DNA of 62,390 bases, the filler included, from Platydemus manokwari (lineage: Eukaryota), in NCBI GenBank assembly GCA_037951405.1. It is 6 parts of 6 records of this genome, joined end to end, with 100 filler letters (N's around TTAATTAATTAA, not from the genome) between each part and the next. Parts side by side here need not be neighbours in the genome. Positions count along the whole stretch, not along the records: positions 19,547 to 32,634 come from JBBMOY011845834.1; 5 more parts are not named here. The stretch is one strand, 5' to 3'. Numbering within the stretch: position 1 is the first letter of the stretch; the number at the start of each line of letters is the position of its first letter. A program made the translations under genes and the position numbers. Below the pieces are notes generated by a model. The model saw only the letters and a program-made list of their open reading frames with translations, was not told where the DNA came from and ran no database searches. Positions 17,321-32,634 of the stretch are shown piece by piece.

Positions 17321-19446
17321 TCTAAAACAAATAATTAAATAACGTTAAGCTCTGATAACATATGGTATGTTAAATTCAACATAGTGCATGTTATATTTTG
17401 AAAACATGTGTATGGAATTAAATTATTTTATTTGGTTCCATATACAGAAATAATAAATAAAATAATCAACGAACAACCCATACGTCACATGGTATTTTAG
17501 TCGCACATCACCAATTGAATGTCATTCATTGTTTTTGGCTGATTTGTCGGGTTTCCTGTTTGTATAACTGTTTATCTATTAATGAATTTGGAAATACAGA
17601 AACTGGCTGGCGAGCACGTACGTTCTAACAATGGTCACATAGGTCGACTAATATATCTTTTTGTTAACATAAATTTGAACAAATCGTACTATGGGAGATA
17701 TTGAGCGTTCAGAAAGTCTTGTTGCTATTCCTATGGCTTGAACCGTTGGATTTGAGTTTCCCTATTTTGTCATTCTATTTATTTTAAAATTTATTTATTC
17801 GGTCTAGAATTTGAATATATTATAAAGCGGATTATCGACTAGTACTATGACCGGGTTGGATTCTGCAGCTCGTGGTTCAATGAGTGTAATGTATGGATAA
17901 AATGTTGCATATAAAGCCTTTCGTTTTTCACGTGTATCACCTTTCATTTGAGATGATGGCTTCCACTGCAAGAATTGGTAAGTAAATAATCATTATGTGA
18001 TTATATATAATGATAAATCCTTCGATATACGTAGTATCTCCTTATTGTTCCTTGTGAAACTCTATATGGGATACAAGAAATATTCAGTGAAGTCCACGAT
18101 TGAATGAAATGTAGTGAATTTCGATTTTGAACAGCCATATGCTAAAGCATTTAGCTGTTATTTATCAATTCTAGAAAATTATGTATACCGATGACCGTTC
18201 CATTTGATTCTAGTAGTTCACAAAAATTGGTCCCAATGTTTGGGTGTGAAGCATTTAATTGTATCCATCGATTGATAAATTGGTACGCTATCCCTTGTCA
18301 ATCAATCGACATTATAATTTTACTAGATATCTAGTTTGAAATAATAATTTTCAATAATAACTTTTATTTTATTTTATTTTATTTTATTATTATTATTTGT
18401 TTAATCGGTTGAAATAACTCGATAGCCTCTGTTTATGGCCAATTGTTTATTGATTTATTATTTTTCACTTCTTTATAAGAATTTTTCCATTCATATTTTC
18501 AAGTGAATCATATAATTCTAGAAGTGATTTGGTAATTTGAATGGATTTTTTGTATTTCTTATTTGGTTCTAGTTCTACATTAATTTTCTAAAACCGATAG
18601 ACCAATGAAGTTACAGACATTTATATTTAAAACAAGTAACTTTTCATCGAACTATTATCAAAAAATATAGAATCGGAATATTTAAACTAATTGTTATAAC
18701 GTTAAGATTTAGAATAAGAGTTAAAGTATTTATGTTAATATAATTGTTGAAATAGCCTCGATACTATACGCTGCAGCACCAACAGAATAAATGACCAATA
18801 CATTATAATCATAATATCTCAAATAACCTCAAATTCAAGCAAGCTATCCCTAAGATAATAAACTACTGTCTTTAACCATGGGAAAAGTACGTTCTATTTA
18901 CTGAGTTAATTAAATTTTAAATTCTCTAAAGTTTTTAAAGCCTCAATGTGAAAGAGCCTAAATCGTAAGAACTCGATTCAAAAAATTTAGATTATAGTGA
19001 AAGGAACTTGATAAATAGAACGTCATTGTTATATGAAGTAAATAATTTTTTACCAAGCAATATAACTTGCATGAAATAGTATGGTGCGCAGATAATGGTT
19101 TGAGCAGTAAAAGAATTAAAATCAGACGATACTAATTTGATATAAAATTAAATGAAATAAGTGATTTAAGCCCAAATATTGTAAGACTTGAGGATATAAA
19201 CAGTTTAGATATTGAAAAGTTTAATACCTGAAACAATAATAAAGTTTAATAACCATTACTATTTAATAAAGCACGCTTTAAAATCAAACTGAAAAATCAC
19301 GATATCAAATTATCTATTTAAGAACAATTATTTAAACAAATTGATATATTTTGATATTTAATTATAAAATTGTTATTGTATTAAATTTTTTAAATTCTCA
19401 CATAAATCATACTAATAATACAGTTGGAGATAATGTAAATTCAATT

Positions 19447-19546
19447 NNNNNNNNNNNNNNNNNNNNNNNNNNNNNNNNNNNNNNNNNNNNTTAATTAATT
19501 AANNNNNNNNNNNNNNNNNNNNNNNNNNNNNNNNNNNNNNNNNNNN
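19447..19546. other. Artificial contig spacer
   Basis: Same N44-TTAATTAATTAA-N44 block. Confidence 0.97.
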
Positions 19547-21942
19547 AGAGCTGTTTAAGTGTCAGAGGTTATTTGTGTTTATGTCGAACATTTTATTTGG
19601 TTGTTTCAAGGTAAACTTGTGTAGTTGTGATAAATAGATTATTTATAATTGTTTGCCATTTTTATATTCAACAATAGCATAATTCGCTAAAGCATAGGAA
19701 TTAAAATTAAAATCTTGTTACATAAACGATAAATATATAAAATACAAAAATTATGTAACAATTGTTTAGACAAATAACAGGGGGAAGTTGATTGGTTATT
19801 AATCAGAATTCCAATTGTTTTGGTTCTATCATAATACAACTGGATAATTTTATGGATTGTCTTTCATGGTTATACCATTAAGGCTCTAATTTATTAATTG
19901 TTTATTGGTAGTTAGTATTAATGATACTGTAACCACTAAAATTGGGATATCAGTTTAATGTTTAGAGATTATTTATTCTTCATTTGAACTGTGTTCATTC
20001 TGTAATGGAAATATTAGATATCAACTAAAATATAAGTTATGAGAATTTTATAACAAATAAAAATTTACTCGATATGTTGGTAGCAGTTGGATTTTGAAAA
20101 TAATAGATTCTTCTTAGTAAACCTACAGTCAAAACGGTTTTAAGGCTATTATAATGTTTTGTTTCAGGTTGTTTTTGTGATAAGCAATTGTTATGGGGTC
20201 ACAATTATTTGTTTATCAAGATTGTTTCACCTAGGATATTGTGACAAGAGTAAATTGACAAAATTTGATAGAAATAAAAATATTAAATCATATAAAATAT
20301 TTTCAAAAGACCGAGGCTCTTCTAAAAATAGCAGCAATAAATATAAATAGGATACTAAAAATAATATATATAAAATACAAAAGTAAACAAAACCAAATAG
20401 GTCAAAAAGAAAAAAATAATATATAAAGAGAAGTATAATGCATAGAAGTGCCATAAATTATTTATCTTAAAAAAGCACATAATTTTTATCAGTCTATAAC
20501 TTATCGAATTAATTGTATGTGGAACTATTTTGCCATCTCAACACAAAAATCCAATTACTACGTGTCATATTTTTCAATAGAGAAATCCCACACATAGGAG
20601 ATATTATTTCAATATGTGGAATTATTAATTCATTATCGGTCGGGGAATTATAATTGTATATAATATTCCAACTAGAAGCACAGAAAATAGAAAGAAACGA
20701 AAGAGGAAATAAATTCTGCTACGCGACTAAAGTAAACTTTACATCGTAATTTTTCTATAATTTCTAATGTCTTATAAAATCGCCTTCAATGTTATCAACA
20801 GTGTCTTGAGCACCGCCCAATCACTATTTAATTAAATTTTAAACCTATCAAAGTAATCATTTGCTCTAAATATATTTGCCGGGCAATTAGGTCCCAGCTA
20901 CCGTCAGTAATTTTTCAGGACCTTGCAGCTCTCCGCACAAGGGACTTATAAATTTATCACCGGACAATTGCAGCTAATTAATTGAATATTATAAAAATCC
21001 TCTTGGTTATTTACTAAGGGTTCTTGTATTATTTATTTTTCTTTTATTTATTTATATTTAAACTTATTTTCTTCATTTTATGCACTGTCTTTGAAGTCAG
21101 GTATAAAATAAGAGCTTATTTATCAATATAGAACCTTCTGGAATTTGGAACTAAATAAAACCAAACAATTATTAGTAACTATTTACATTTCGTAAAGGGT
21201 GATTTTGTTTTGTTCACGTTTCTTTTATACTATTTTCTAATTCGTTAGTTACTTTGGTTTTATATTTTTAGACTATTAGTCAATTTATTAATACTATTTT
21301 TGCCCATTTAATTTTGTGATTTCTTTATTTAGTAACTAATTAATTTTATTTCTATTTTTGTATTTTCTAAATTCTCTTTTTAGAGTGGATAATTTCTATT
21401 TCTTTTTTTGGATAAAATATTCATTTAATCATGATGAATCATTGTAAAAATTTTAAAAAATTATATTTATTAATTATTATTTATCATAGAGTTGTAACCA
21501 ACCATATAATTATTTGGCAATATCATCTGATGCGTTTGGCATGGTTGGGAAGCATAGAATTTGTTAATTTTATAATTATTTATATTAATTAGTAAAACTT
21601 ACTTCCATAAAACGCAACTTTAAATCCGCTAAAAGTCAGATGTTGTTGGGATTCATTTTCATTCTCTATCAAAGGTGACCAAAGCTTGATTAAGCATTTG
21701 ACAAGTTTTATCGATCGTAATTATTTTTGATAATTGCTAAGCTTTCATTGAATTCACAATCCTATCTGTTATGTCCTTGTTTTATACTACCCACTTCACG
21801 GTGTGTCGAATTGATTTAATTAAATCTATTTTTTATTTATTTCAGCATTGGTAATGGTGATAAGCATTTCGAAAATATTAACATTATTTAATAATATTTT
21901 TTGTAATTTTACTTTTATTGTTAGAGCTTAGCTAGATACATT

Positions 21943-23800
21943 TTGGATTTGTTTAAAAATGATCATCGTGCACCAGTTAATCACATGGAATCTCCAAACA
22001 ATAAAAGACCAATAAGATCAATTAAGGCTATTCCGTCTAAATTTTACAACGATTGTAGAGGAAAACCCACACCACGTGGTGATTATTTGAAACCGGGAGC
22101 TTGCTTTTCCTGTGATAAGCTTGGACATCGGAAGTTTCAATGTCCACTGTGGAATAGATGTTTGATATGCGAAAAATAAGGATTCCAATAGTTTGGAACA
22201 ATAAAATTCTTGTAAAGGAGATCTTTGTAGTAAAAGAAATTTCACCAGGTTTTATAGGAGGAGTTGATATGATGAAGACTTGTGGAATATTCATTGCACG
22301 AATAGAATCAATTGATACAAAAGACGTTGGAAATAAATAAAGTGACCAAAACAGAATTGTAATGGCGTTGAAGAGTATTGTTGATACGAACGATATTTCA
22401 TTGAATGCGCAAATAAAAAAATGGCTCCGTTTTTATAGGGGCTCGGTTCGATTTGGGACTAAAAGATATGGTGAAGCACATGATATCCAAATGTTATTGG
22501 ACTCGGTATATGGCGGGACAATTTTCTTCACAAAAGATTTAGGCCAAGCAAATTATCACGTGAATTTGAGGAAAATTCTAAGTTAAAAACGGCGTTTAGC
22601 ACTAGAACTAGTTAGTTCTTTTTTAACAGATTACCTTCTAGATTATGTACCTCGCCAGCTATTATTCAGAATCTAATGAATACTATATTCAAGGATTTGA
22701 TTTACAAGAGCGTTCTTGTTTATCTGGACGATATTTTAGTGTATGGAAGAACAGTGGAGAAACATAATGAGAAATTCGACAAGGATTTCAGGTTGATTAA
22801 TTCATCATGTTTGAAAATTAATCCCGAAAGATGCGCTTTTGGTACTAGAAAATTGAATTTCCTGGGTCATACAGTTAGTACAGAAGGTAAAGAAAGTGAT
22901 AACGACAAAGTAAAGAAGATTAAATAAGCAATAAAATCCTGTTGCATAACCCAGTTGAGGTCGTTCCTATGATTGTTACAGACGATTTCTCAAAGACTAC
23001 GCATTAATTACAGCTCCACTATATGCGATGATGACTGGAAGTGACAAAAAAAATTGGAGTGGAATATAGAGTGTGAGGAAAGTTTTGTAAACCTAAACGA
23101 CCAATTATGCACTATTCCGATTTTGACATTTTCGAATCCAAACAAAGAGATGATTTTAGATACCGACAGTAGAGTCGGAGCGATTGTCAGCATTATTAGC
23201 CATTCGGACGACACCGGAAAAGAGACCTAGAACTTCTAGAACTCTTAATAGTCATGAAAAAGGTTATTGGGTCTAGAGGGAGGAGCTTTTGGTAATCCAC
23301 GAGTTCAATATGCATTTTAAGCATTATCTACTGGGAAAGAAATTTGTGAATACATTAACATATATGAAGAAAACTAATAAACCTATTATCCCTCAATTTC
23401 AAATATGATTTGCAAATTTATCCGGATTCAATGTCAAAGTTCAATATCGGAAGGGATCAGATCATGGAAATGCGGATGGACTCTCAAGGATAGGCGAAGC
23501 ATTTTGTTCACATTGCTTAACTCAGCACCAAGGTGCTAATGAAAGTAAACCAAAAAATAGGTTCATTAATGTTATCGAGCATTCAATTGTGAAAAAATGA
23601 CGAACTAAGAAAGATTCAACAAAAAGATACTGTCATTGGCTCCATTCTAAAATGGCTCAGAAAACGGAAACAGGAGTCAGCGGTCAAGAAAAGCAAATAT
23701 TTTAACAGTTTAGAGAAATTCGAATTGTTTGAAGATATGGTTGTGTATAATGAGAATGGAAAAAAGCGAATTGTTTTACCAGAGGTTCATTCACAGATTA
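21943..23800 (+). mobile_element. Ty3/Gypsy retrotransposon gag-pol relic (pseudogenised)
   Basis: CCHC knuckle CFSCDKLGHRKFQC; protease C-terminal remnant FIGGVDMM; RT motifs FFTKDLGQANYHV, KTAFST and VLVYLDDILVYG; RNase H motifs ILDTDS, HFKHYLLGKKF and QYRKGSDHGNADGLSR. Many stops and frameshifts; I did not see an integrase core. Confidence 0.92.
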
Positions 23801-24029
23801 AACAGGAAGATATAATAATTTATATTAATCATGTATAATTTATATCTCATATTCACCACTATCTATACAGATATTCTCAAATATCCTGATGAAGGTACTT
23901 GCCAAATATCGACGAAGGGGCTTATGATCATAAAAGCTTCACTGAATTTTTATAACTATAATTCAACAATTAAACTTATGAAAGTATTATTTAAAATCAG
24001 TATAATTTATATTTCTGTTAGGTAGATCA

Positions 24030-24560
24030 CAAATCAATCAAAATAGTCGCAAGAACCAGAGAAAGAACTGTAAAAAATACACGCAGATCCGACAAACACA
24101 TATGTCGTTAACCAATCAGATTCGTTCTAATGTTAAGCCATATTTAGAAGCTAAAAATCAACAGACGCATACCTACAAATGTCAGCAAGCTCAAATATCC
24201 GCCAATGGCATGATGTAAGGAAATCCACGAACAAATTCGGTGAATGGAAAACGAAGATCCGCGATATCAAGTAGACACGCCCGATAGGATTATAAAAGAG
24301 GTTGAGTTCCATGGATTTCTGGAAATCTTTTTTGGTCGGTATCTTCAGTGCTTAGATTATGTGTGATTCCAGTAATCAGTGTTTTTGATTACTCTTCATT
24401 CAGTTTTTGACTTTCGTGCGCTGATCCCGTCTTGAATGATTTTTTGTGAATTATGTAAAGATTTGCTATTGTTTTGAGATCTTGAGTGTATATTTTAGTT
24501 AATACAATTTTCAGATCTAAATTGTTGATTGATAACCCAACAGTTCATTGTTAATAAATA
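24030..24560 (+). mobile_element. LTR-like sequence (possible 3' or solo LTR)
   Basis: TATAAAAGAGG at ~24291 then tcttt..ggtcgg. A similar layout occurs at ~1215-1450, and ttgataaccca.cagtt recurs at ~39062. Confidence 0.45.
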
Positions 24561-25425
24561 TTTATTTTAGTATTTGTATTGAGTCGTTTAATTGACACTG
24601 TCTATAGGATTCATAATCTTCATTTGGTTGAAATCATCATTTATGACACCCATCATTTATTTTTGATAATTTGAAAATCAGTGAAACAATAGAAGTGGCT
24701 GGTATAAAATAATAAATCAATCTAATACCTTCTTATTATTTTGGATCAATTATTCTGGAATTAATGTGTATAATTTATTGTTTATTTTATCACGTAACAG
24801 TTGACATACTAATTTTGTAAAAATTATTGTAATTAATATTGAAATTTAAGTTCCATTGCGAATGTCTTGAAAAAATGAGTTAGATACCATTTATGTATTT
24901 TTTAATTATTGTTTTATGAAATCAGATATTGTTATTATGAATTTATAACAAATTCAAATCTTATTCATGGTGAAAAATCCAATTGGTAAAAAATTACCTT
25001 TACGATAATTTAATGTGACACAAATGTTCAATAACCAAATGATATTGCAAATATTCGAGGAATTATTATCAGTTATAAAAAATTTCACATGTCTGTACCT
25101 GAGTAATGACTAACAGTGATAAACTTTTCTCCTCCATAGCTGAGTTTTAATGACAAAACAATTAATCACCTAAACACAATGTTTGTCACAAAAATCGAAA
25201 CTATATTTTTAATATTATAATTAAGCCATTCATTATGAAATTATTAAGAATAAAATTATATTACAATAGATCAGATAAATATCGATCTATTATGAGAAAT
25301 CAATAAAATGGTTGTATCAAATAAATAAGGAATATAAGACAATAGTTATAATAACTGGCATTATTAAATAAAGAACAGGAAAACATCTAAAACAAAAATC
25401 AAAATTTAAAACACAGAAATCATGT

Positions 25426-28400
25426 CTATTTGATTTGACGGTTGCGAGAGCCATTGCTATTACTGATTGAAGGCGGCGGCATTCTCGATTGATCTGATGA
25501 ATTGCTAAATAATAAAATAATGATTATATATTTATTTATAAATTTCTTTTCAATATCAATGCCTCTTTTGAATTCCACTGAATGTGCGACCTCCGTGATT
25601 AATATTTCTTATTCCCGCACGTCCTCCTGACAATATTACATCAATATTACCAGAATTATGCATCAATTATCTTTACCTCTTAGATTACGAAGATTTCGTT
25701 CGCGTAACATAATTTCTTCCTGGATACAAATGTATATTATTGATTAAATTCACTATTATTATACAACAATTGTTTGTCACATAATTTTATTAAGCAAAAT
25801 TTGGATAAATTTATGAAAAAACCAAAGATTTATAATAAACAATGAAAATTTTTGTGTTTTCCCATCTGATGATTAAAAGGTCAAAATAATATCCATAGAG
25901 TTCAGATATTTGGGGTTAGTTGAATTGAAGAAAGAGATAAACAAGAATAAGAAAATATAAATATAATGATCATCATTGGATGTAGCTATATCAATATATA
26001 AATATTGTGCGCAGATTCTATTGCGATAGGAATAATGGAGATTGAAGCTCAACAATATTTCAGAAAATCACTTTATTTTAATGTATAACATTATACAATA
26101 ACTTCGGTCGATATTGTCGAATGATTTATTGTTTTTTAGACAATTATTCAATAAAAGGTAAAATTGATTAATGATTACAGGAAATATTTAATTGATTATT
26201 TTTATAAAACAATTTCACAGTAAATTATTAATTATGTAATTATAACTTAATATTTCTAATTTGTCGATTAATACAAAGGAACGAAAACATATCATTAGAA
26301 TGAAGAGAGAGAGATCAAATAAATGATATTAACAGTAACAGAATACATTGTACACAATGCAGGAAAATACAATGATCAAAATTATGGGATTGTGATTATA
26401 TTTGGGAACTTTAATTATATTTTTGCAATGGGTAGCAATTGTGATACCACATATATAAATTAATATTATATATTATATTACACAAATAATAAATTAATAT
26501 AGTGATAATAATAATTGTTATTATTAATTGTACATTATAAATATTTTAAGTTTAATGACCACTAAAAATTAATGACGCAGTAAACAGATAAGCTGAATAA
26601 TATTTGCAATGCTTATGGAAGTATTAAATGTGATCCGTAATAGACCTTATATTTTCAAGCATTTTTTATAATTAAAATTGAATAGATTATTATTATTTGG
26701 TTATATTTGATAATATATATCCGTTGTTATAGCAATCGGTGGTCATGACTAAAAACAAAGATAATCAATATTAAATAGTTGTGCTTCTGATTTACAATAT
26801 TAATTATCTTATTTTATTGATTTTTAACAAAATAAATGTTTCTCATTGATTTTATAAGATAGTGTTATGGTTTGAGAGTTTATTAAAATCAATATTTTCA
26901 AAAATAAATCAATACTAACATCTAATTTCTCATCCTTTTGTAGTTTTTGGAAATCATCAACATGCATACTTGGCGGTCTACTAGTATTGGGTGGTCTTGA
27001 TCGGAATGAATCATATCGATCTCCGTTATTGGTTGTCACCAATGTGTTGCTTCGAACACCAAAACCTCTGCCACGCATGGGAGCCACTGAAATAATAAGA
27101 CAACCAAAAATATTAAAATCAAAAAAACATAAAGAAGAAAGATCATTAAAAATATCATGAGTAGTTATAACATATTGAGCTGACTAAACACATACGAAAT
27201 CGATTTTAAAATATATGTTTGGGTTTAAAAATTATCCTTGCTTTCAAAAAAATATAATTATGTCTCTCATTGATAATTATATTGATTTATAATAGGAAAA
27301 TTCGATTGAGCTCTCAAACTTATTGATTATTAATAATATTTATTGGAGATAATGTAATCCAGATATTATGATATAAGATAATATATCGATTAGAAATAGT
27401 TCACAGCAAAGCATCGATATTAATGATTATCAAATGATGAGCAAGCCTACCGAATTTCTTGCTACTCCTCCCGGTATGAATGATTGCATCATGCCCTCTT
27501 CGTCTGCGCTTATGTCTAATAGCTTCATCATCTTGTTGTCGACCCCTTGCTAGCTCATCGTGAAGATTGAATCCATTACAACAAACATAGGCCAGATTTT
27601 CCAAATCACATCTGGACAATTCTGGCTGTTCTCTTTCCGTAACTTTCACTGGACCAAGCCACTCACGATAACCTTCCCCGGAAACATATTCTTCATCGTG
27701 TACTCGACTCCAAACTCCTCGAGACTTGTACATTTGTTCCAAACTTTGAGGTAAAGGCATAATTCCTGATGTTCCCTCAATGCCATCAGTATTTCCGGAA
27801 ATCAAGTCATTTTTGGATAACAGTTCTATCAAACTCTCCATCCCATCTCGCAAAATCTGCAACGATTCTTCTTCTTCCGAAACGATCTATTTAAAAATTA
27901 TATAATCGATTGATTAGATCACATTGCACAATCAATATTCGCAAAATTGGCCCTTGTGATTTACCTTAAGTAGTCCATGTAATTCCGCAACTGGATGAGC
28001 ACTGTTTGATTCTTTATTTCCTGTCCATTGTAACATCTGTTTTACATGGGAGTCACTCAAATTCAAGGTACGAGGAGGTAACTGATATGATATGGGTTCA
28101 TCACTATTGTCTTGTTTGACGACGAGCACCTGTAATAACGACAGTGCAGTCAACAGACTAACTTGACAATCGGGATTATCAGCACTGAACGTTTCGTTCA
28201 CTCGTTTGATAAGGCTTAAAAACATTCCCGGTTGCTGATCTAGAACTCTGAAATTTTGATAATTTGGTATCGTACTTGATTAGATATACTAACTCAAGCA
28301 AAATACGGAAACCGTAGTCATGACCAGCCAGCAGTACTAGAGGTCTAAGAGCACCGGGAATTGTTGACATATCCTGATCCGGATTTACACAATGGCGTGC

Positions 28401-30053
28401 CAACCAACCAACTAGCATCAAACATTGAGCATTGGTAGGTAAACCATTAACGAGCTCCTGATTTGTAAGGACACGACTCGATGATGGAATTAATTCTTGA
28501 CTTCCTTCGAAAATCACTTCATCTATAGTGCTGGGTTCTTGGACAGCAGACAACATGGTTACACGGGCATCTAAAAGAAGTTGCAAGCAAGCCTGTGAAC
28601 AAATTATTTAAGGAAGATATAATTGAAAATATCCAACTATCATATTTTCTTGAGAAGCGGTATGATTTTCTTTACTTGCTTCTAACAATTCAGATATTAT
28701 TCGATAAAATAATGTTTCGAACGTTTGTTCACTATCGAAATTATCGGGCAAAGGTCTAACAGATCAAATTGATGAAAATATCCCACCACGATTATCAATG
28801 AATTACTGTTGTCCAATCAGTTTTAAAAATGCATGTTTACAAGCAGGCACACTGAGAATCAGCTTCAACATAGCCCATGTTCTTGTCAGTTCAAGGGAAT
28901 CAGGATAAAGTTTGATTTTCGCATCGATACCCAAAAATGAATCCGTTCTTAAAAGAGTTTGATTCGCATTACTTGACAGAATATTACTGCCCATTGTTCC
29001 ATCTTTACCGGTGCTATCATCAGTTTGTTTGCTAGAATACGTTCAATGAATTCATCAAAAAACATTGAGATCATTTAATAATTTGTATTAAAAGGAGAAC
29101 AAAATGAATAGCGTCATTTTGTTTACAAGATTTTCACAAAGAAATCAATATTATTGGATAAATATTTTGCTATTTTAGAAATATTGACTAATAAAAGCTT
29201 TATTGAATAATTTGGTACATATCAAATGACTAGATAATCACGAAATAAATATGATTACAACGCTCACCTATTCAATTCCTTATTGCTTGTCCCATCTGTA
29301 TTACTCTCTCCTGCTTCGGCTGTTTTCAGCGATTGAACGTATTCATTATGTGAAGTCATTTCTTTACATGCTCTTTCCCATACTTCAAGAAGTGTTTCTA
29401 AGCTATTCTGAGCTAACATCAATGCTGTACTGGGCCCAAGAGCACTTATAAGATTAATAAGTCTAGTCAATAAGGTTATTAATATGTAATTGCTGGTGCA
29501 GCCAATTGTCAATATTAAATCTTTCAATTCCTGCCTCACACACAGTATATGAGCACTCCATAAAGTTCTTGCAGATTGAATCTATAATTCAGAAAAAAAA
29601 TAAGAAATATGAATTAGTATGGAATAAATGATATCATTCAATATTATGATAATGCTGTATAAATGACAAGGTCAGTTATTCAATCTTCGAATTAATACAA
29701 TAAAAATATTTAGAAAAATCAGAAAAAAATAAAATTAAAAAAATAATAACATCATAAAATTATCTTACTTGTGCTGTTTCCTCGTCTGTGAGGGGGACAT
29801 TTGTTAGAACGGGTAATGGCAGTGGTAGCAGTTCTATCAACAATGTTAATCCACCAGCAAATGCAAAAGGAGCGCTTTGTGTGAAATTAAGCAACTCTCT
29901 CAGCATACATGTCCACAGGCTTTTTCCTAATGCTGACGTAAGCAATCGAATTAAAAATCAATTTTGAGAATTACTTTTACCTTTTTCATTCTCTTCATCG
30001 GGTAATTGAGATTGGGTGTAAGTTAATACTGTATCGATAATTGAATGACGAAT
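25426..30053 (-). CDS. VIRMA: Virilizer / KIAA1429 (m6A writer complex subunit), C-terminal portion only, 12 exons, 754 aa
   Basis: Exons 30053-29981, 29932-29769, 29581-29268, 29031-28807, 28755-28638, 28592-28294, 28247-27965, 27886-27451, 27086-26920, 25719-25677, 25626-25563, 25504-25426 join in frame (2265 nt, all phases consistent; the last intron needs a GC donor). Hallmark motifs ELLPLPLP, RTLWSAH, APMRGRGF and DSFRSRPPNTSRPPSMHVDDF. Confidence 0.92.
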
Positions 30054-30201
30054 CTGTGAATAAAAATGGTAATATTTTTATTAAACTTCAAAGACGCTTA
30101 TATATAATCACAAAGAGTAGTCAAATATTAAAATGTGATAACTAAGACCATGGTATTCCATTTTAATATCATAAAATATCATTTTGTACATTCTGTCAAA
30201 C

Positions 30202-30580
30202 CAGGGGTTCTTAGTCCCGAAGTCGGCAAGCTTTTTTAAGTGGGTCACCGAATTATGGTAGATGTATAAACCATTACATGTGAATAATCGTGTTTTATGA
30301 TGCTGTTAAATAAATAGTTTGTGATGCTGATTAAACTACTTCTGTTCACAATTACCTTGACTACTACAGTTAAATATTTCATAGGCAATGTTATTATCTG
30401 ATGATCTTATTATTAATATAGGTAATTCATTACTTGTTGTATCAACATTCTTATCAACTTGTTAGAAATTGGTTTCATTAAATATATTGAGTTGACTTAT
30501 TTTTAGTAATATTGATTTTCTTTGCGGTTACCAAGATCTTAAAAATGGGTTGCCATAGAAAAAAGGTTGAGAACCGCTGT
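30202..30580. mobile_element. hAT (Charlie/Buster-type) MITE
   Basis: Terminal inverted repeats CAGGGGTTCT ... AGAACCGCTG. The right flank ttctaatg resembles the NTCTAGAN target, but the target-site duplication is not intact. Confidence 0.65.
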
Positions 30581-30707
30581 TCTAATGGGTCTTAAATTAA
30601 TATAAATTTATCGAACGAAGTCGTGGATTTATGCAAGATTTTTATAAAATTTAAAAATAAATATCAAATCATTTTTGGAAGTGCAGTTAGGTTTGGTGAT
30701 AATAAGT

Positions 30708-31598
30708 CTAGATATAAGAGGATTTGTTTTGTTTACTGTCATCATCTGATACATTATAATCATCTAAAAGAGCAACATTATCTGTCTTAATTATTTTCTT
30801 TTTTCTACGCCCAATCTCTAAACTAGACCATAAACTACTCAAGCTGCTTCGAAGAGATCGTCTAAGGTTTCGCTTGGGTAATTTTATGTCCTTTCCGAGA
30901 TTTACTCCAATCTGAATTTTAGTATATGTAGTGGATTAAAACAATCGTTTGATTTACTTCAATATTTCCGGATTTTAGATACTCAAGGTGCTGATTATAG
31001 CCTTGATCGGCTAATTTTTCTTCATTTGGTTTAGTCCACAGCTTGAGCATCAAACTCAGACATACAACACAGATGGAACTGGCTGCCATTGCTACTGAAG
31101 CCATCCATGGCATAAATACAACTCCGACAGGCATAAGTGCACCTAGAAATCTCATAAATAAATATTTCAAATATAATCTTGAGAAAACTGATTTGGAAGA
31201 AAAACCATCCATTTAGAGTACATACCTGCTGCTATTGGAATTCCAATCAAGTTATACATTGTTGCTGCAATAAAATTCTGTCTAATCCTTCTCACTGTAG
31301 CTTTACTCAATTTCATAGCGGCTATAACATCAAGCAGAGAATTTCTGATGAGAACTACGTCAGCTGCTTCCACTGCTACATCAGTGCCCGTTCCAATTGC
31401 GATACCTACATCAGCCTGAGCAAGAGCCGGACTATCATTGATTCCATCACCGACCATGGCTACGACTTGCGACTTTGAAGATTTCCTACAACATCTAAAC
31501 AGCGAAGAACTTTTCTTATCACAGGTGGCTTGGATTTGTTGAATTTTCGCGACTTTGTGTGAAGGAAGTACTTCTGCAAAAACGTGGTATATGCCAAC
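30708..31598 (-). CDS. ATP7: Copper-transporting P1B-type ATPase (ATP7A/B-like), last three exons
   Basis: Exons 31598-31226, 31142-30958, 30911-30708. Motifs [57 protein letters not shown], and a tail with ALLDD di-leucine. Stop TAG at 30710-30708. Confidence 0.96.
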
Positions 31599-32580
31599 CT
31601 AAATTATCTCATTTGAAATATCTTTTATAATTAAGAATGTAGTTATATATACTTATCTCTTAATATCACCGCAACCGAAAATCAATTCTACATTCACTAT
31701 ATATTAATAACAATATCAATACTCATTTGTTTATGCAAGATAAGAAGAGACTGTGATTTCATTATAAATCTAGAAAGATAGAACCTCATAAGTAAGTAAA
31801 CATTTATTATTGAGGTTTTCAAAACATTATGGTAACTGCTACTTTATATAAGTAATTTAAAAAAAAACTTATAATCAGCGTTAGTTATTATAATAATGAT
31901 TCTATCTGGAACCTTCGATCAGTGTTTATAAATCAATTTTGCTAATCTAAATGAGAATTTATAAATTGTAATTATAAATATAAATTATAAATTAATAAAG
32001 ATGGAGAAATCGTTCATTTACGTTAATGTAATTAAAGATCTCAGAAAAGGAAAGAAAAATGCAACAATTTTAGGAATTAATCTAATTAGTGAATCACGTT
32101 GAAAATTATTATAAACTAGTGAATAATTAATTATTATTTTATAATGAGGAAAATATTAATTATTTCTCATAATTTTCTAAAAATTTGTTTTCTCATAAAA
32201 ATTATTACATCTAATTGATAATAAATTTAAGATAATTTTTTTGACAATATTGACAGTGCCTCTGTTCAGAGTTTTGTAACTATTATTTTAATCGAGGAAA
32301 ACCATAACATAAACCAATTTGAAATTATTTAAATATTAAACCTTTCAATGCTTCAGATCAAATATAAAATAAATTTTTCAAAACATATTTTCCTAAGTGT
32401 GCATATATTTACCAGAATAAACTCAATGCTATTTTAAAAATTGGACTTAACTTTTAAAAATATAAAATAACATTACTAAGATGATATAATCCAGAAATGT
32501 GATAAGGCCGAAAATAAGAGAAGAATTGTAATAGTGATAATCTAATGAAAAATTAAGTAGTAAAAATAAATGAATATTAG

Positions 32581-32600
32581 TATTATTATTATTATTATTA

Positions 32601-32634
<34 letters not shown>
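32581..32634. repeat. (TAT)n microsatellite at contig end
   Basis: About 18 near-perfect TAT units running into the spacer. Confidence 0.9.

What the first reader, a model, noticed from the sequence alone, without database searches (positions are those of the whole stretch)
29981..31598. VIRMA C-terminal part begins ~650 bp downstream of the ATP7 stop codon: split gene in a trans-spliced operon, or interleaved genes?
Seen: within one uninterrupted contig and on the same strand, ATP7 stops at 30708 and the first VIRMA exon starts at 30053 behind a strong acceptor (ttttattcacag). That exon has no ATG and starts in phase 0 (ATT CGT CAT). There is no room between the genes for the missing N-terminal part, and removing the 379-bp MITE leaves only ~275 bp. 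Known: animal VIRMA is ~1800 aa but only 754 aa are here; flatworm spliced leaders end in AUG, which can act as the start codon; flatworms have SL-resolved polycistronic loci. Inference: either VIRMA is fissioned and its C-part is expressed as SL-AUG+IRHSII... from an ATP7 operon, or ATP7 is nested same-strand inside a VIRMA intron. Both would be unusual for an m6A writer subunit.
Basis: partly seen in the sequence, partly recalled or inferred. Interest (0 to 1): 0.8.

Follow-up and report, generated by a model that had tools for sequence, protein, structure and literature searches.

The report
VIRMA tail beside ATP7, across repeat
The last third of an ordinary VIRMA (m6A writer scaffold) gene does start 654 bp after the end of a copper-pump gene, but the two meet across a roughly 1,300-copy transposon with no insertion footprint, so a false or recombinant join is at least as likely as a split gene or operon.

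Summary
On the minus strand a copper P-type ATPase (ATP7) gene ends at 30708. An intact 11-exon, 727-aa chain matching only the C-terminal third of VIRMA (human residues ~1060 to the end) starts at 30053. That exon sits behind a good acceptor, in phase 0, and no upstream ATG reads into it.

No N-terminal VIRMA exon exists anywhere in the 13-kb piece. Exon 1 is an ancestral internal exon: a trematode has the same 24-aa mini-exon and intron position, and a tapeworm has an intron at about the same place.

In four other flatworms VIRMA is one gene of 1,686-2,289 aa. None has an ATPase gene called inside it or within 10 kb.

The spacer holds a 378-bp hAT-like MITE (30202-30579) at about 1,300 times single-copy depth. 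It has no target-site duplication. The only available DNA run cannot bridge it. That points to two loci joined through the repeat, either in the assembler or by real MITE-MITE recombination.

No RNA data were obtainable, so spliced leader versus upstream exon is undecided.

My odds:
- Assembly chimera: ~0.40
- ATP7 nested in a VIRMA intron: ~0.25
- Real rearrangement: ~0.25, of which a working spliced-leader-rescued fission is ~0.15
- Other: ~0.10

Interest is moderate to low until reads are checked.

The parts
31226..31573 (-). ATP7-like Cu(+) P-type ATPase exon (P-domain hinge, [11 protein letters not shown], start of TM7)
   Evidence: PDB 7si3/7xuk E 4e-35/1e-34; Pfam Hydrolase_3; acceptor tttttgcag, donor gtatgt
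30958..31142 (-). ATP7 penultimate exon (last transmembrane helix); donor in phase 0
   Evidence: continuous frame with neighbouring exons
30708..30911 (-). ATP7 last coding exon with di-leucine/acidic tail and stop TAG 30710-30708
   Evidence: translation
30580..30707 (-). unique spacer after the ATP7 stop; no canonical AATAAA/ATTAAA, only TATAAA, CATAAA, GATAAA
   Evidence: hexamer scan; single-copy depth 12.7
30202..30579 (.). 378-bp hAT-like MITE: terminal inverted repeats CAGGGGTTCT.. and CAGCGGTTCT.., about 1,300 times single-copy depth, no target-site duplication (flanks TGTCAAAC and TTCTAATG)
   Evidence: depth 18,308 against 13.8, other copies diverge at 30579, and unique contigs end at 30315 and 30557; TSD scan
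30054..30201 (-). unique 148 bp before exon 1: ATTAAA at 30167, AATAAA at 30082, acceptor ttttattcacag; no ATG open into exon 1
29981..30053 (-). VIRMA exon 1 of the piece (IRHSIIDTVLTYTQSQLPDEENEK), phase 0, equals human ~1060-1085; ancestral 24-aa mini-exon
   Evidence: alignment with 11 orthologues; same mini-exon and intron in T. szidati; intron at about the same place in Spirometra
29769..29932 (-). VIRMA exon 2 (ELLPLPLP motif)
   Evidence: human VIRMA 1088-1129, E 2e-5
29268..29581 (-). VIRMA exon 3
   Evidence: tblastn E 9e-8 with the Macrostomum protein; model
28807..29031 (-). VIRMA exon 4
28638..28755 (-). VIRMA exon 5 (weak donor gttgga, 45-nt intron)
28290..28592 (-). VIRMA exon 6
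27965..28234 (-). VIRMA exon 7 (FSADNPDCQ motif)
27451..27886 (-). VIRMA exon 8 (Halter region and RNA-binding tail start)
   Evidence: human VIRMA 1465-1576, E 0.0095; flatworm hits in the representative library
26920..27086 (-). VIRMA exon 9 (VAPMRGRGF ... RSRPPNTSRPPSMHVDDF)
   Evidence: tblastn E 1e-14
25677..25719 (-). VIRMA exon 10 (inferred)
   Evidence: frame and splice sites only
25556..25626 (-). VIRMA exon 11 (inferred) with RG-rich end and stop TGA; AATAAA follows at 25536

Best explanation
The VIRMA exons are the normal 3' third of a canonical, full-length VIRMA gene, and exon 1 (30053) is an ordinary internal exon. Its contact with the ATP7 3' end is most likely not an insertion-bearing spacer. 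It looks like a junction of two separate loci, made through two copies of a very abundant hAT-like MITE. The likeliest maker is the assembler: this is a 13-kb contig of a fragmented assembly. One locus would be 'ATP7 3' end + MITE copy B'. The other would be 'VIRMA intron with MITE copy A, 148 bp before exon 1'.

Shown:
- exon 1 is internal by homology
- no upstream VIRMA exons are in the piece
- the repeat is very high copy
- it has no target-site duplication
- no independent contig bridges it

Inferred:
- the join is false
- the missing ~1,060-1,360 codons lie elsewhere in the genome and are cis-spliced to 30053
For: - The repeat at 30202-30579 has about 1,300 times single-copy depth.
- The two unique contigs of run X1 end inside it, at 30315 and 30557, so nothing links the flanks.
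- Its ends are well defined: symmetric CAGNG-type inverted repeats, and other copies diverge exactly at 30579.
- No direct repeat of 2-10 bp flanks it at any offset up to 6.
- The copy is young. Only about 5-7 sites differ from the family majority, so a target-site duplication should still be readable.
- The piece is a short contig ending in a microsatellite, which suggests a repeat-limited assembly.
- VIRMA is one unbroken gene in Macrostomum, Trichobilharzia, Dicrocoelium and Spirometra. None has an ATPase called in it or within 10 kb.
- The intron before exon 1 is ancestral, so an upstream partner exon is the default expectation.
- In the human complex both halves of VIRMA carry essential contacts (PMC9652331).
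Against: - No read-level evidence of a misjoin was obtained.
- The ambiguous core of the repeat is only about 240 bp. Part of it (around 30441-30493) belongs to a rare subfamily with depth ~100. Paired reads could therefore have resolved it correctly.
- Both genes lie on the same strand and exon 1 is in phase 0. An operon model predicts both; a chimera gets them only by chance (about 1 in 4 to 1 in 6).
- Flank depths are equal (13.8 and 12.7).
- The 8-bp duplication expected of a hAT-type element rests on my recall of that superfamily. It was not measured on other copies of this family.
Confidence: 0.4

Rival explanations
1. The contig is right and VIRMA is a normal cis-spliced gene. Its upstream exons lie beyond 32634. 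ATP7, or at least its 3' part, is nested on the same strand inside the ancestral intron before exon 1.
For: - The acceptor at 30053 is the conserved acceptor of an internal mini-exon.
- All 11 exons are intact.
- Flank depths are equal and single copy.
- Trematode VIRMA genes have very large introns, with genes of 75-138 kb.
Against: - A young cut-and-paste insertion in an intron should keep its target-site duplication, and none is present.
- A many-exon gene with its own poly(A) site nested on the same strand would compete for the host's splice donor. That is rare (general knowledge).
- No nested gene is called in VIRMA of four other flatworms.
- No VIRMA exon lies in the 2.6 kb upstream of exon 1.
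Confidence: 0.25
2. A real rearrangement between two MITE copies cut VIRMA in the intron before exon 1 and put its 3' third behind ATP7. The orphaned acceptor is then trans-spliced to the flatworm spliced leader. The leader's terminal AUG supplies the start codon (M-IRHSII...). The C-part is made from an ATP7-driven polycistron and the N-part from a separate gene. A variant: the rearranged copy is a heterozygous or dead allele beside an intact one.
For: - Same strand, phase-0 acceptor, no usable ATG upstream.
- No target-site duplication, as expected for a recombinant repeat.
- The exon chain is intact, with conserved motifs.
- ATTAAA and AATAAA lie 114 and 29 nt before the acceptor, so an ATP7 3' end close to the acceptor is possible.
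- Flatworm leaders end in AUG followed by GU. Operon candidates are taken at 200-1,000 bp. Acceptors are often shared between cis- and trans-splicing (PMC12582326).
Against: - No RNA evidence at all.
- The gap of 654 bp exceeds the 300-bp operon cut-off used for flatworms.
- The poly(A) hexamers are at chance frequency in 70% A+T DNA.
- The cut lies inside the Neck of the ARM-like solenoid. In the human complex both halves hold essential WTAP, ZC3H13 and RNA contacts (PMC9652331).
- VIRMA knockdown is lethal in planarians (PMC9627665).
- No VIRMA fission is seen in four other flatworms.
Confidence: 0.25
3. The exon chain is a partial duplicate or a decaying remnant, and a full-length VIRMA lies elsewhere.
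For: It lacks a 5' part and a start codon.
Against: - 727 codons have no stop or frameshift, and all ten introns are GT-AG.
- Conserved motifs are kept.
- Depth is single copy, so there is no recent identical twin.
Confidence: 0.05

Closest known systems
VIRMA / Virilizer / KIAA1429, scaffold of the m6A writer accessory complex (human structure 7VF2)
   Same: The 727-aa chain aligns colinearly with the C-terminal third of animal VIRMA: part of the Neck, the Head, the Halter and the RG-rich RNA-binding tail. It keeps the motifs ELLPLPLP, FSADNPDCQ, VAPMRGRGF and RSRPPNTSRPPSMHVDDF.
   Different: The VIR_N domain and the Belly, Chest and Back repeats (about 1,060 human residues, 1,250-1,360 in flatworms) are not in the piece. 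Identity to the nearest relatives is only 31-33%.
Spliced-leader-resolved polycistrons of flatworms (Schistosoma, cestodes, Macrostomum)
   Same: Two same-strand genes lie close together. The downstream one starts at a splice acceptor with no ATG. The leader's AUG could start translation in phase 0.
   Different: Here the downstream unit starts at an internal exon of a conserved gene, not at its 5' end. The spacing is 654 bp, with a transposon in it. No leader-bearing read is known.
hAT-type MITEs (inverted repeats starting CAGNG, 8-bp target-site duplication)
   Same: 378 bp, non-coding, imperfect ~55-bp terminal inverted repeats beginning CAGGG/CAGCG, more than 1,000 copies.
   Different: This copy has no target-site duplication. 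The family's duplication length was not measured on other copies.
Metazoan ATP7A/ATP7B copper ATPases
   Same: The P-domain hinge, the last transmembrane helices and a C-terminal di-leucine tail are all present.
   Different: Only the last 242 codons are in the piece.

Membership tests
VIRMA (Virilizer) family | N-terminal VIR_N domain (Pfam PF15912) | tested here: not met
   No match in any frame of 19547-32634 to the N-terminal two thirds of orthologues. The orthologues carry PF15912. Absence from the piece is not absence from the genome.
VIRMA (Virilizer) family | Colinear homology to the ARM-like Neck/Head, Halter and C-terminal tail | tested here: met
   blastp E 3e-90 to 3e-79 against flatworm VIRMA over the whole model. 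Human VIRMA 1088-1129 and 1465-1576 are matched.
VIRMA (Virilizer) family | Shared intron positions with orthologous genes | tested here: met
   T. szidati has the same 24-aa mini-exon and the intron before it. Spirometra has an intron within about 2 residues. M. lignano lacks it.
Flatworm SL-resolved operon | Same-strand genes separated by at most 300 bp (200-1,000 bp in older studies) | tested here: inconclusive
   654 bp from stop to acceptor, or 276 bp without the MITE. The true ATP7 poly(A) site is unknown. Thresholds are from PMC12582326.
Flatworm SL-resolved operon | Spliced leader joined to the downstream gene's first acceptor in RNA | not testable with these tools
   No RNA run holds the stretch.
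Flatworm SL-resolved operon | The downstream cistron is a complete gene | tested here: not met
   The downstream unit begins at the equivalent of human VIRMA residue ~1060, an internal exon.
Nested gene (ATP7 inside a VIRMA intron) | Host exons on both sides of the guest gene | not testable with these tools
   The piece ends at 32634 inside an ATP7 intron. No VIRMA exon lies in 30054-32634.
hAT-type MITE | Terminal inverted repeats beginning YARNG, high copy number, no coding capacity | tested here: met
   CAGGG and CAGCG ends. Depth is about 1,300 times single copy. Only short ORFs are present.
hAT-type MITE | 8-bp target-site duplication flanking the copy | tested here: not met
   TGTCAAAC against TTCTAATG, 3 of 8 identical. 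No better repeat of 2-10 bp at offsets up to 6.
P1B-type Cu(+) ATPase (ATP7) | P-domain hinge GDGxND followed by the last two transmembrane helices, with best matches to copper ATPases | tested here: met
   [11 protein letters not shown] is present. 7si3 and 7xuk are matched at E 4e-35 and 1e-34, ahead of Zn, Cd and Ca pumps.

The most novel reading that the evidence does not exclude
VIRMA is truly split in this flatworm. MITE-MITE recombination cut the gene in an ancestral intron and placed its last third behind ATP7. The orphaned internal acceptor is trans-spliced to the spliced leader. The leader's terminal AUG, in phase 0, starts a stand-alone C-terminal protein (part of the Neck, Head, Halter and RNA-binding tail). 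That protein would reassemble with a separately encoded N-part in the m6A writer complex.
Probability: 0.15. Interest if true: 0.75.

Novelty: new member of a known kind. Interest (0 to 1): 0.35.

Why it matters
If the join is real and the C-part is expressed alone, it would be the first natural fission of the m6A writer scaffold. It would also be a clean example of how spliced-leader trans-splicing, with an AUG-ending leader, lets a broken gene survive: any orphaned phase-0 acceptor becomes a translatable 5' end.

That would give a natural experiment on which VIRMA half does what. In the human complex, WTAP, METTL3/14 and ZC3H13 contacts sit in the N-terminal half, and the Halter and RNA-binding tail sit in the C-terminal half.

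If the join is false, the value is practical. High-copy MITEs without a target-site duplication mark suspect joins in this assembly, and gene models built across them should not be trusted.

Tried and rejected
1. **RNA evidence.** Laying it showed only that contigs break in the repeat.
3. **Same-species or close-relative protein.** An exhaustive HMMER search with exon 8 gave 13 hits. The nearest were Macrostomum and trematodes at 33-49%, plus one 62% fragment. That fragment's contig is 58% G+C, from an unrelated organism, and covers only the 3' part.
4. **Word search with the Macrostomum protein.** No triclad or close relative turned up.
5. **Hidden N-terminal exons, including interleaving with ATP7 exons.** There was only one chance-level hit: minus strand 32287-32180, 7.5 bits, E 0.16 among 736 segments, 21% G+C, and no continuation. 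Rejected.
6. **Own start codon.** No ATG upstream is open into exon 1. An ACCATG|gtctta mini-exon at 30151 would need a poor donor with C at +3. Not supported.
7. **Conserved ATP7-VIRMA linkage.** Absent in four flatworm genomes.
8. **Planarian m6A papers.** They give no gene structure for kiaa1429.
9. **Pfam on single VIRMA exons.** No hits, since Pfam models only the missing N-terminal domain.
10. **Rfam on the piece.** Nothing.
11. **Searches with the whole spliced protein.** It was used only in local scripts.
Full report
**What is in the sequence**

Both genes lie on the minus strand.

The upstream one is a copper P-type ATPase.
- Three exons (31573-31226, 31142-30958, 30911-30708) read in one frame to a TAG at 30710-30708.
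- The first exon matches a vertebrate P-type Cu(+) transporter (7si3) and human copper-transporting ATPase 2 (7xuk) at E 4e-35 and 1e-34, ahead of zinc, cadmium and calcium pumps.
- The tail ends with a di-leucine and acidic stretch.

- I built an 11-exon model: 727 codons plus stop, all ten introns GT-AG, introns of 45-1,200 nt, TGA at 25558-25556, and AATAAA 20 nt later.

**What the exon chain is**

- The model aligns end to end with the C-terminal third of VIRMA: Trichobilharzia 1361-2195 of 2289 (E 3e-90), Dicrocoelium 1190-1978 of 2072, Macrostomum 1257-1944 of 2026 (E 3e-79), and molluscs at about 1e-65.
- Single exons hit human VIRMA directly: exon 2 at residues 1088-1129 (E 2e-5) and exon 8 at 1465-1576 (E 0.0095).
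- Counting back from the exon 2 match, exon 1 starts at about human residue 1060.
- In the human cryo-EM structure the solenoid has 20 ARM-like modules: Belly 1-4, Chest 5-7, Back 8-10, Neck 11-15 and Head 16-20. A Halter loop and a C-terminal region needed for RNA binding follow. W987 belongs to the Neck (PMC9652331).
- So the piece encodes the later part of the Neck, the Head, the Halter and the tail. It lacks VIR_N, Belly, Chest and Back, where WTAP H1'/H4', ZC3H13 and the METTL3/14 cross-links sit.
- Pfam finds nothing in single exons, because Pfam models only the N-terminal domain.

**Is the N-terminal part hidden in the piece? No.**

- tblastn with five full-length orthologues at E up to 10 found only the C-terminal exons.
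- A profile of the N-terminal two thirds of eleven orthologues, run without filters against all 736 stop-free segments of both strands, gave one weak hit. It lies on the minus strand at 32287-32180, inside an ATP7 intron: 7.5 bits, E 0.16.
- That hit is 21% G+C where real exons here are 31-44%. It could contribute at most 17 codons between usable splice sites, and the next ~45 conserved residues are nowhere to be found. I treat it as chance, so interleaving is not supported.

**Exon 1 is an ancestral internal exon**

- In the multiple alignment IRHSIIDTVLTYTQ lines up with RIQNDIIDILLTFTQ of vertebrates and IRDSVITGVLAYTH of trematodes. Conserved sequence continues upstream in all orthologues.
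- In the Trichobilharzia gene an exon ends at ...QLER. A 24-25-aa mini-exon, IRDSVITGVLAYTHSELNRVLNIQ, follows after a 2.5-kb intron, and the next exon starts where my exon 2 starts.
- Spirometra has an exon end within about two residues of the same place. Macrostomum has no intron there.
- The acceptor at 30053 is therefore an old cis-splice acceptor, not a new 5' end.

**Comparison with other flatworms**

- VIRMA is one uninterrupted gene call in Macrostomum (15 kb), Trichobilharzia (75 kb), Dicrocoelium (138 kb) and Spirometra (22 kb).
- None has another gene called inside it or an ATPase within 10 kb.
- If the arrangement here is real, it is lineage-specific.
- No protein of this species or a close relative is in the protein collections. 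An exhaustive HMMER search with exon 8 gave nothing closer than 49% identity over a meaningful length. The word search gave no triclad. Papers on planarian kiaa1429 do not describe the gene structure.

**The spacer and its repeat**

- The 654 bp between the ATP7 stop and the acceptor consist of 128 unique bp, a 378-bp repeat (30202-30579) and 148 unique bp.
- In the one public run that holds this DNA, depth is 12.7-13.8 on both flanks and up to about 18,000-22,000 in the repeat. That is roughly 1,300 copies.
- The unique contig of the VIRMA side ends at 30315. The unique contig of the ATP7 side begins at 30557. Since these contigs already hold the unique words of both flanks, no contig of that run links them.
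- The run matches the window with zero differences over 4.8 kb of flank, so it is probably the assembly's own data and is not independent anyway.
- The repeat's ends are imperfect inverted repeats starting CAGGGGTTCT and CAGCGGTTCT, with further similarity over about 55 bp. Other copies diverge from the window exactly at 30579.
- Ends of the form CAGNG are typical of hAT elements, which make 8-bp target-site duplications. This is my recall of the superfamily, not tested on this family.
- The flanks are TGTCAAAC and TTCTAATG, 3 of 8 identical. A scan of duplication lengths 2-10 at offsets up to 6 on either side found nothing above chance.
- The copy differs from the family majority at only about 5-7 listed sites, so a duplication should still be legible.
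- A repeat copy without a duplication is what one gets when the left half of one insertion is joined to the right half of another. That can happen by an assembler walking through a repeat, or by real recombination between two copies.
- It is not what a simple insertion into an intron or an intergenic spacer leaves behind.

- The genes are on the same strand, and exon 1 is in phase 0.
- No upstream ATG is open into it.
- The only canonical poly(A) hexamers between the stop and the acceptor are ATTAAA at 30167 and AATAAA at 30082. An ATP7 transcript could therefore end within 100 nt of the acceptor.
- These hexamers are at chance frequency: about two are expected in 650 nt of 70% A+T.
- The literature confirms three things. 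Flatworm leaders end in AUG before the GU donor, and that AUG can initiate translation (Cheng et al. 2006, cited in PMC12582326). Operon candidates are taken at 300 bp or less, or 200-1,000 bp in older work. Many acceptors are shared between cis- and trans-splicing.
- Phase 0 and same strand together favour the operon model over a chimera by perhaps four- to six-fold. That does not outweigh the low prior of a viable fission of an essential scaffold cut within its solenoid.

**Weighing**

| Explanation | Odds |
|---|---|
| False join through the MITE | ~0.40 |
| Same-strand nesting with cis-splicing from beyond the piece | ~0.25 |
| Real MITE-mediated rearrangement | ~0.25 |
| Partial duplicate | ~0.05 |
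| Other | remainder |

Within the real-rearrangement share, a working spliced-leader-rescued fission is about 0.15. The rest is a heterozygous or dead allele.

The missing duplication lowers nesting. The lack of any read-level contradiction, and the partly rare-subfamily interior of the repeat (depth about 100 near 30441-30493), keep the chimera from being more than a plurality.

That question is what is joined 5' of 30053.

**Verdict**

The most economical reading is an ordinary VIRMA orthologue, an ordinary ATP7 orthologue and a high-copy hAT-like MITE, brought together at a suspect junction.

Noticed in passing
window 21943-23540, + strand: Decayed LTR-retrotransposon remnant in broken frames: gag zinc knuckle (zf-CCHC, 21943-22179), reverse transcriptase (RVT_1, 22676-22927) and RT_RNaseH_2 (23054-23230). 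It lies about 2 kb downstream of the VIRMA 3' end, on the opposite strand.
   Followed up: partly
window 30957, 30911 and 30053, minus strand: The donor of the ATP7 penultimate exon, the ATP7 last exon and VIRMA exon 1 are all in phase 0. Skipping the ATP7 last exon would give an in-frame ATP7::VIRMA-C fusion. This is arithmetic only; there is no evidence of use.
   Followed up: no
window 30455 (inside the MITE): The window's letter C is not seen in any laid contig of run X1 (all read T, depth 102). Around 30441-30493 the copy belongs to a rare subfamily with many internal-deletion variants among other copies.
   Followed up: no
window 32561-32634: The piece ends in an (ATT)n microsatellite, where depth in run X1 drops to 1.4. 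This looks like a repeat-limited contig end.
   Followed up: no
window 32180-32287, minus strand (ATP7 intron): A 26-residue stretch (RGTVNIVKKIILNLLSIRCNNFYEKT) weakly resembles the VIRMA segment about 50 residues before exon 1 (7.5 bits, E 0.16). It is 21% G+C and has no continuation, so I judged it chance.
   Followed up: yes
L003 (Logan contig of DRR639838): A 58% G+C contig from an unidentified organism carries the 3' part of a VIRMA gene or transcript. It shares the 12-residue string RCDLENLAYVCC with exon 8 and is 67% identical over the last conserved block.
   Followed up: partly
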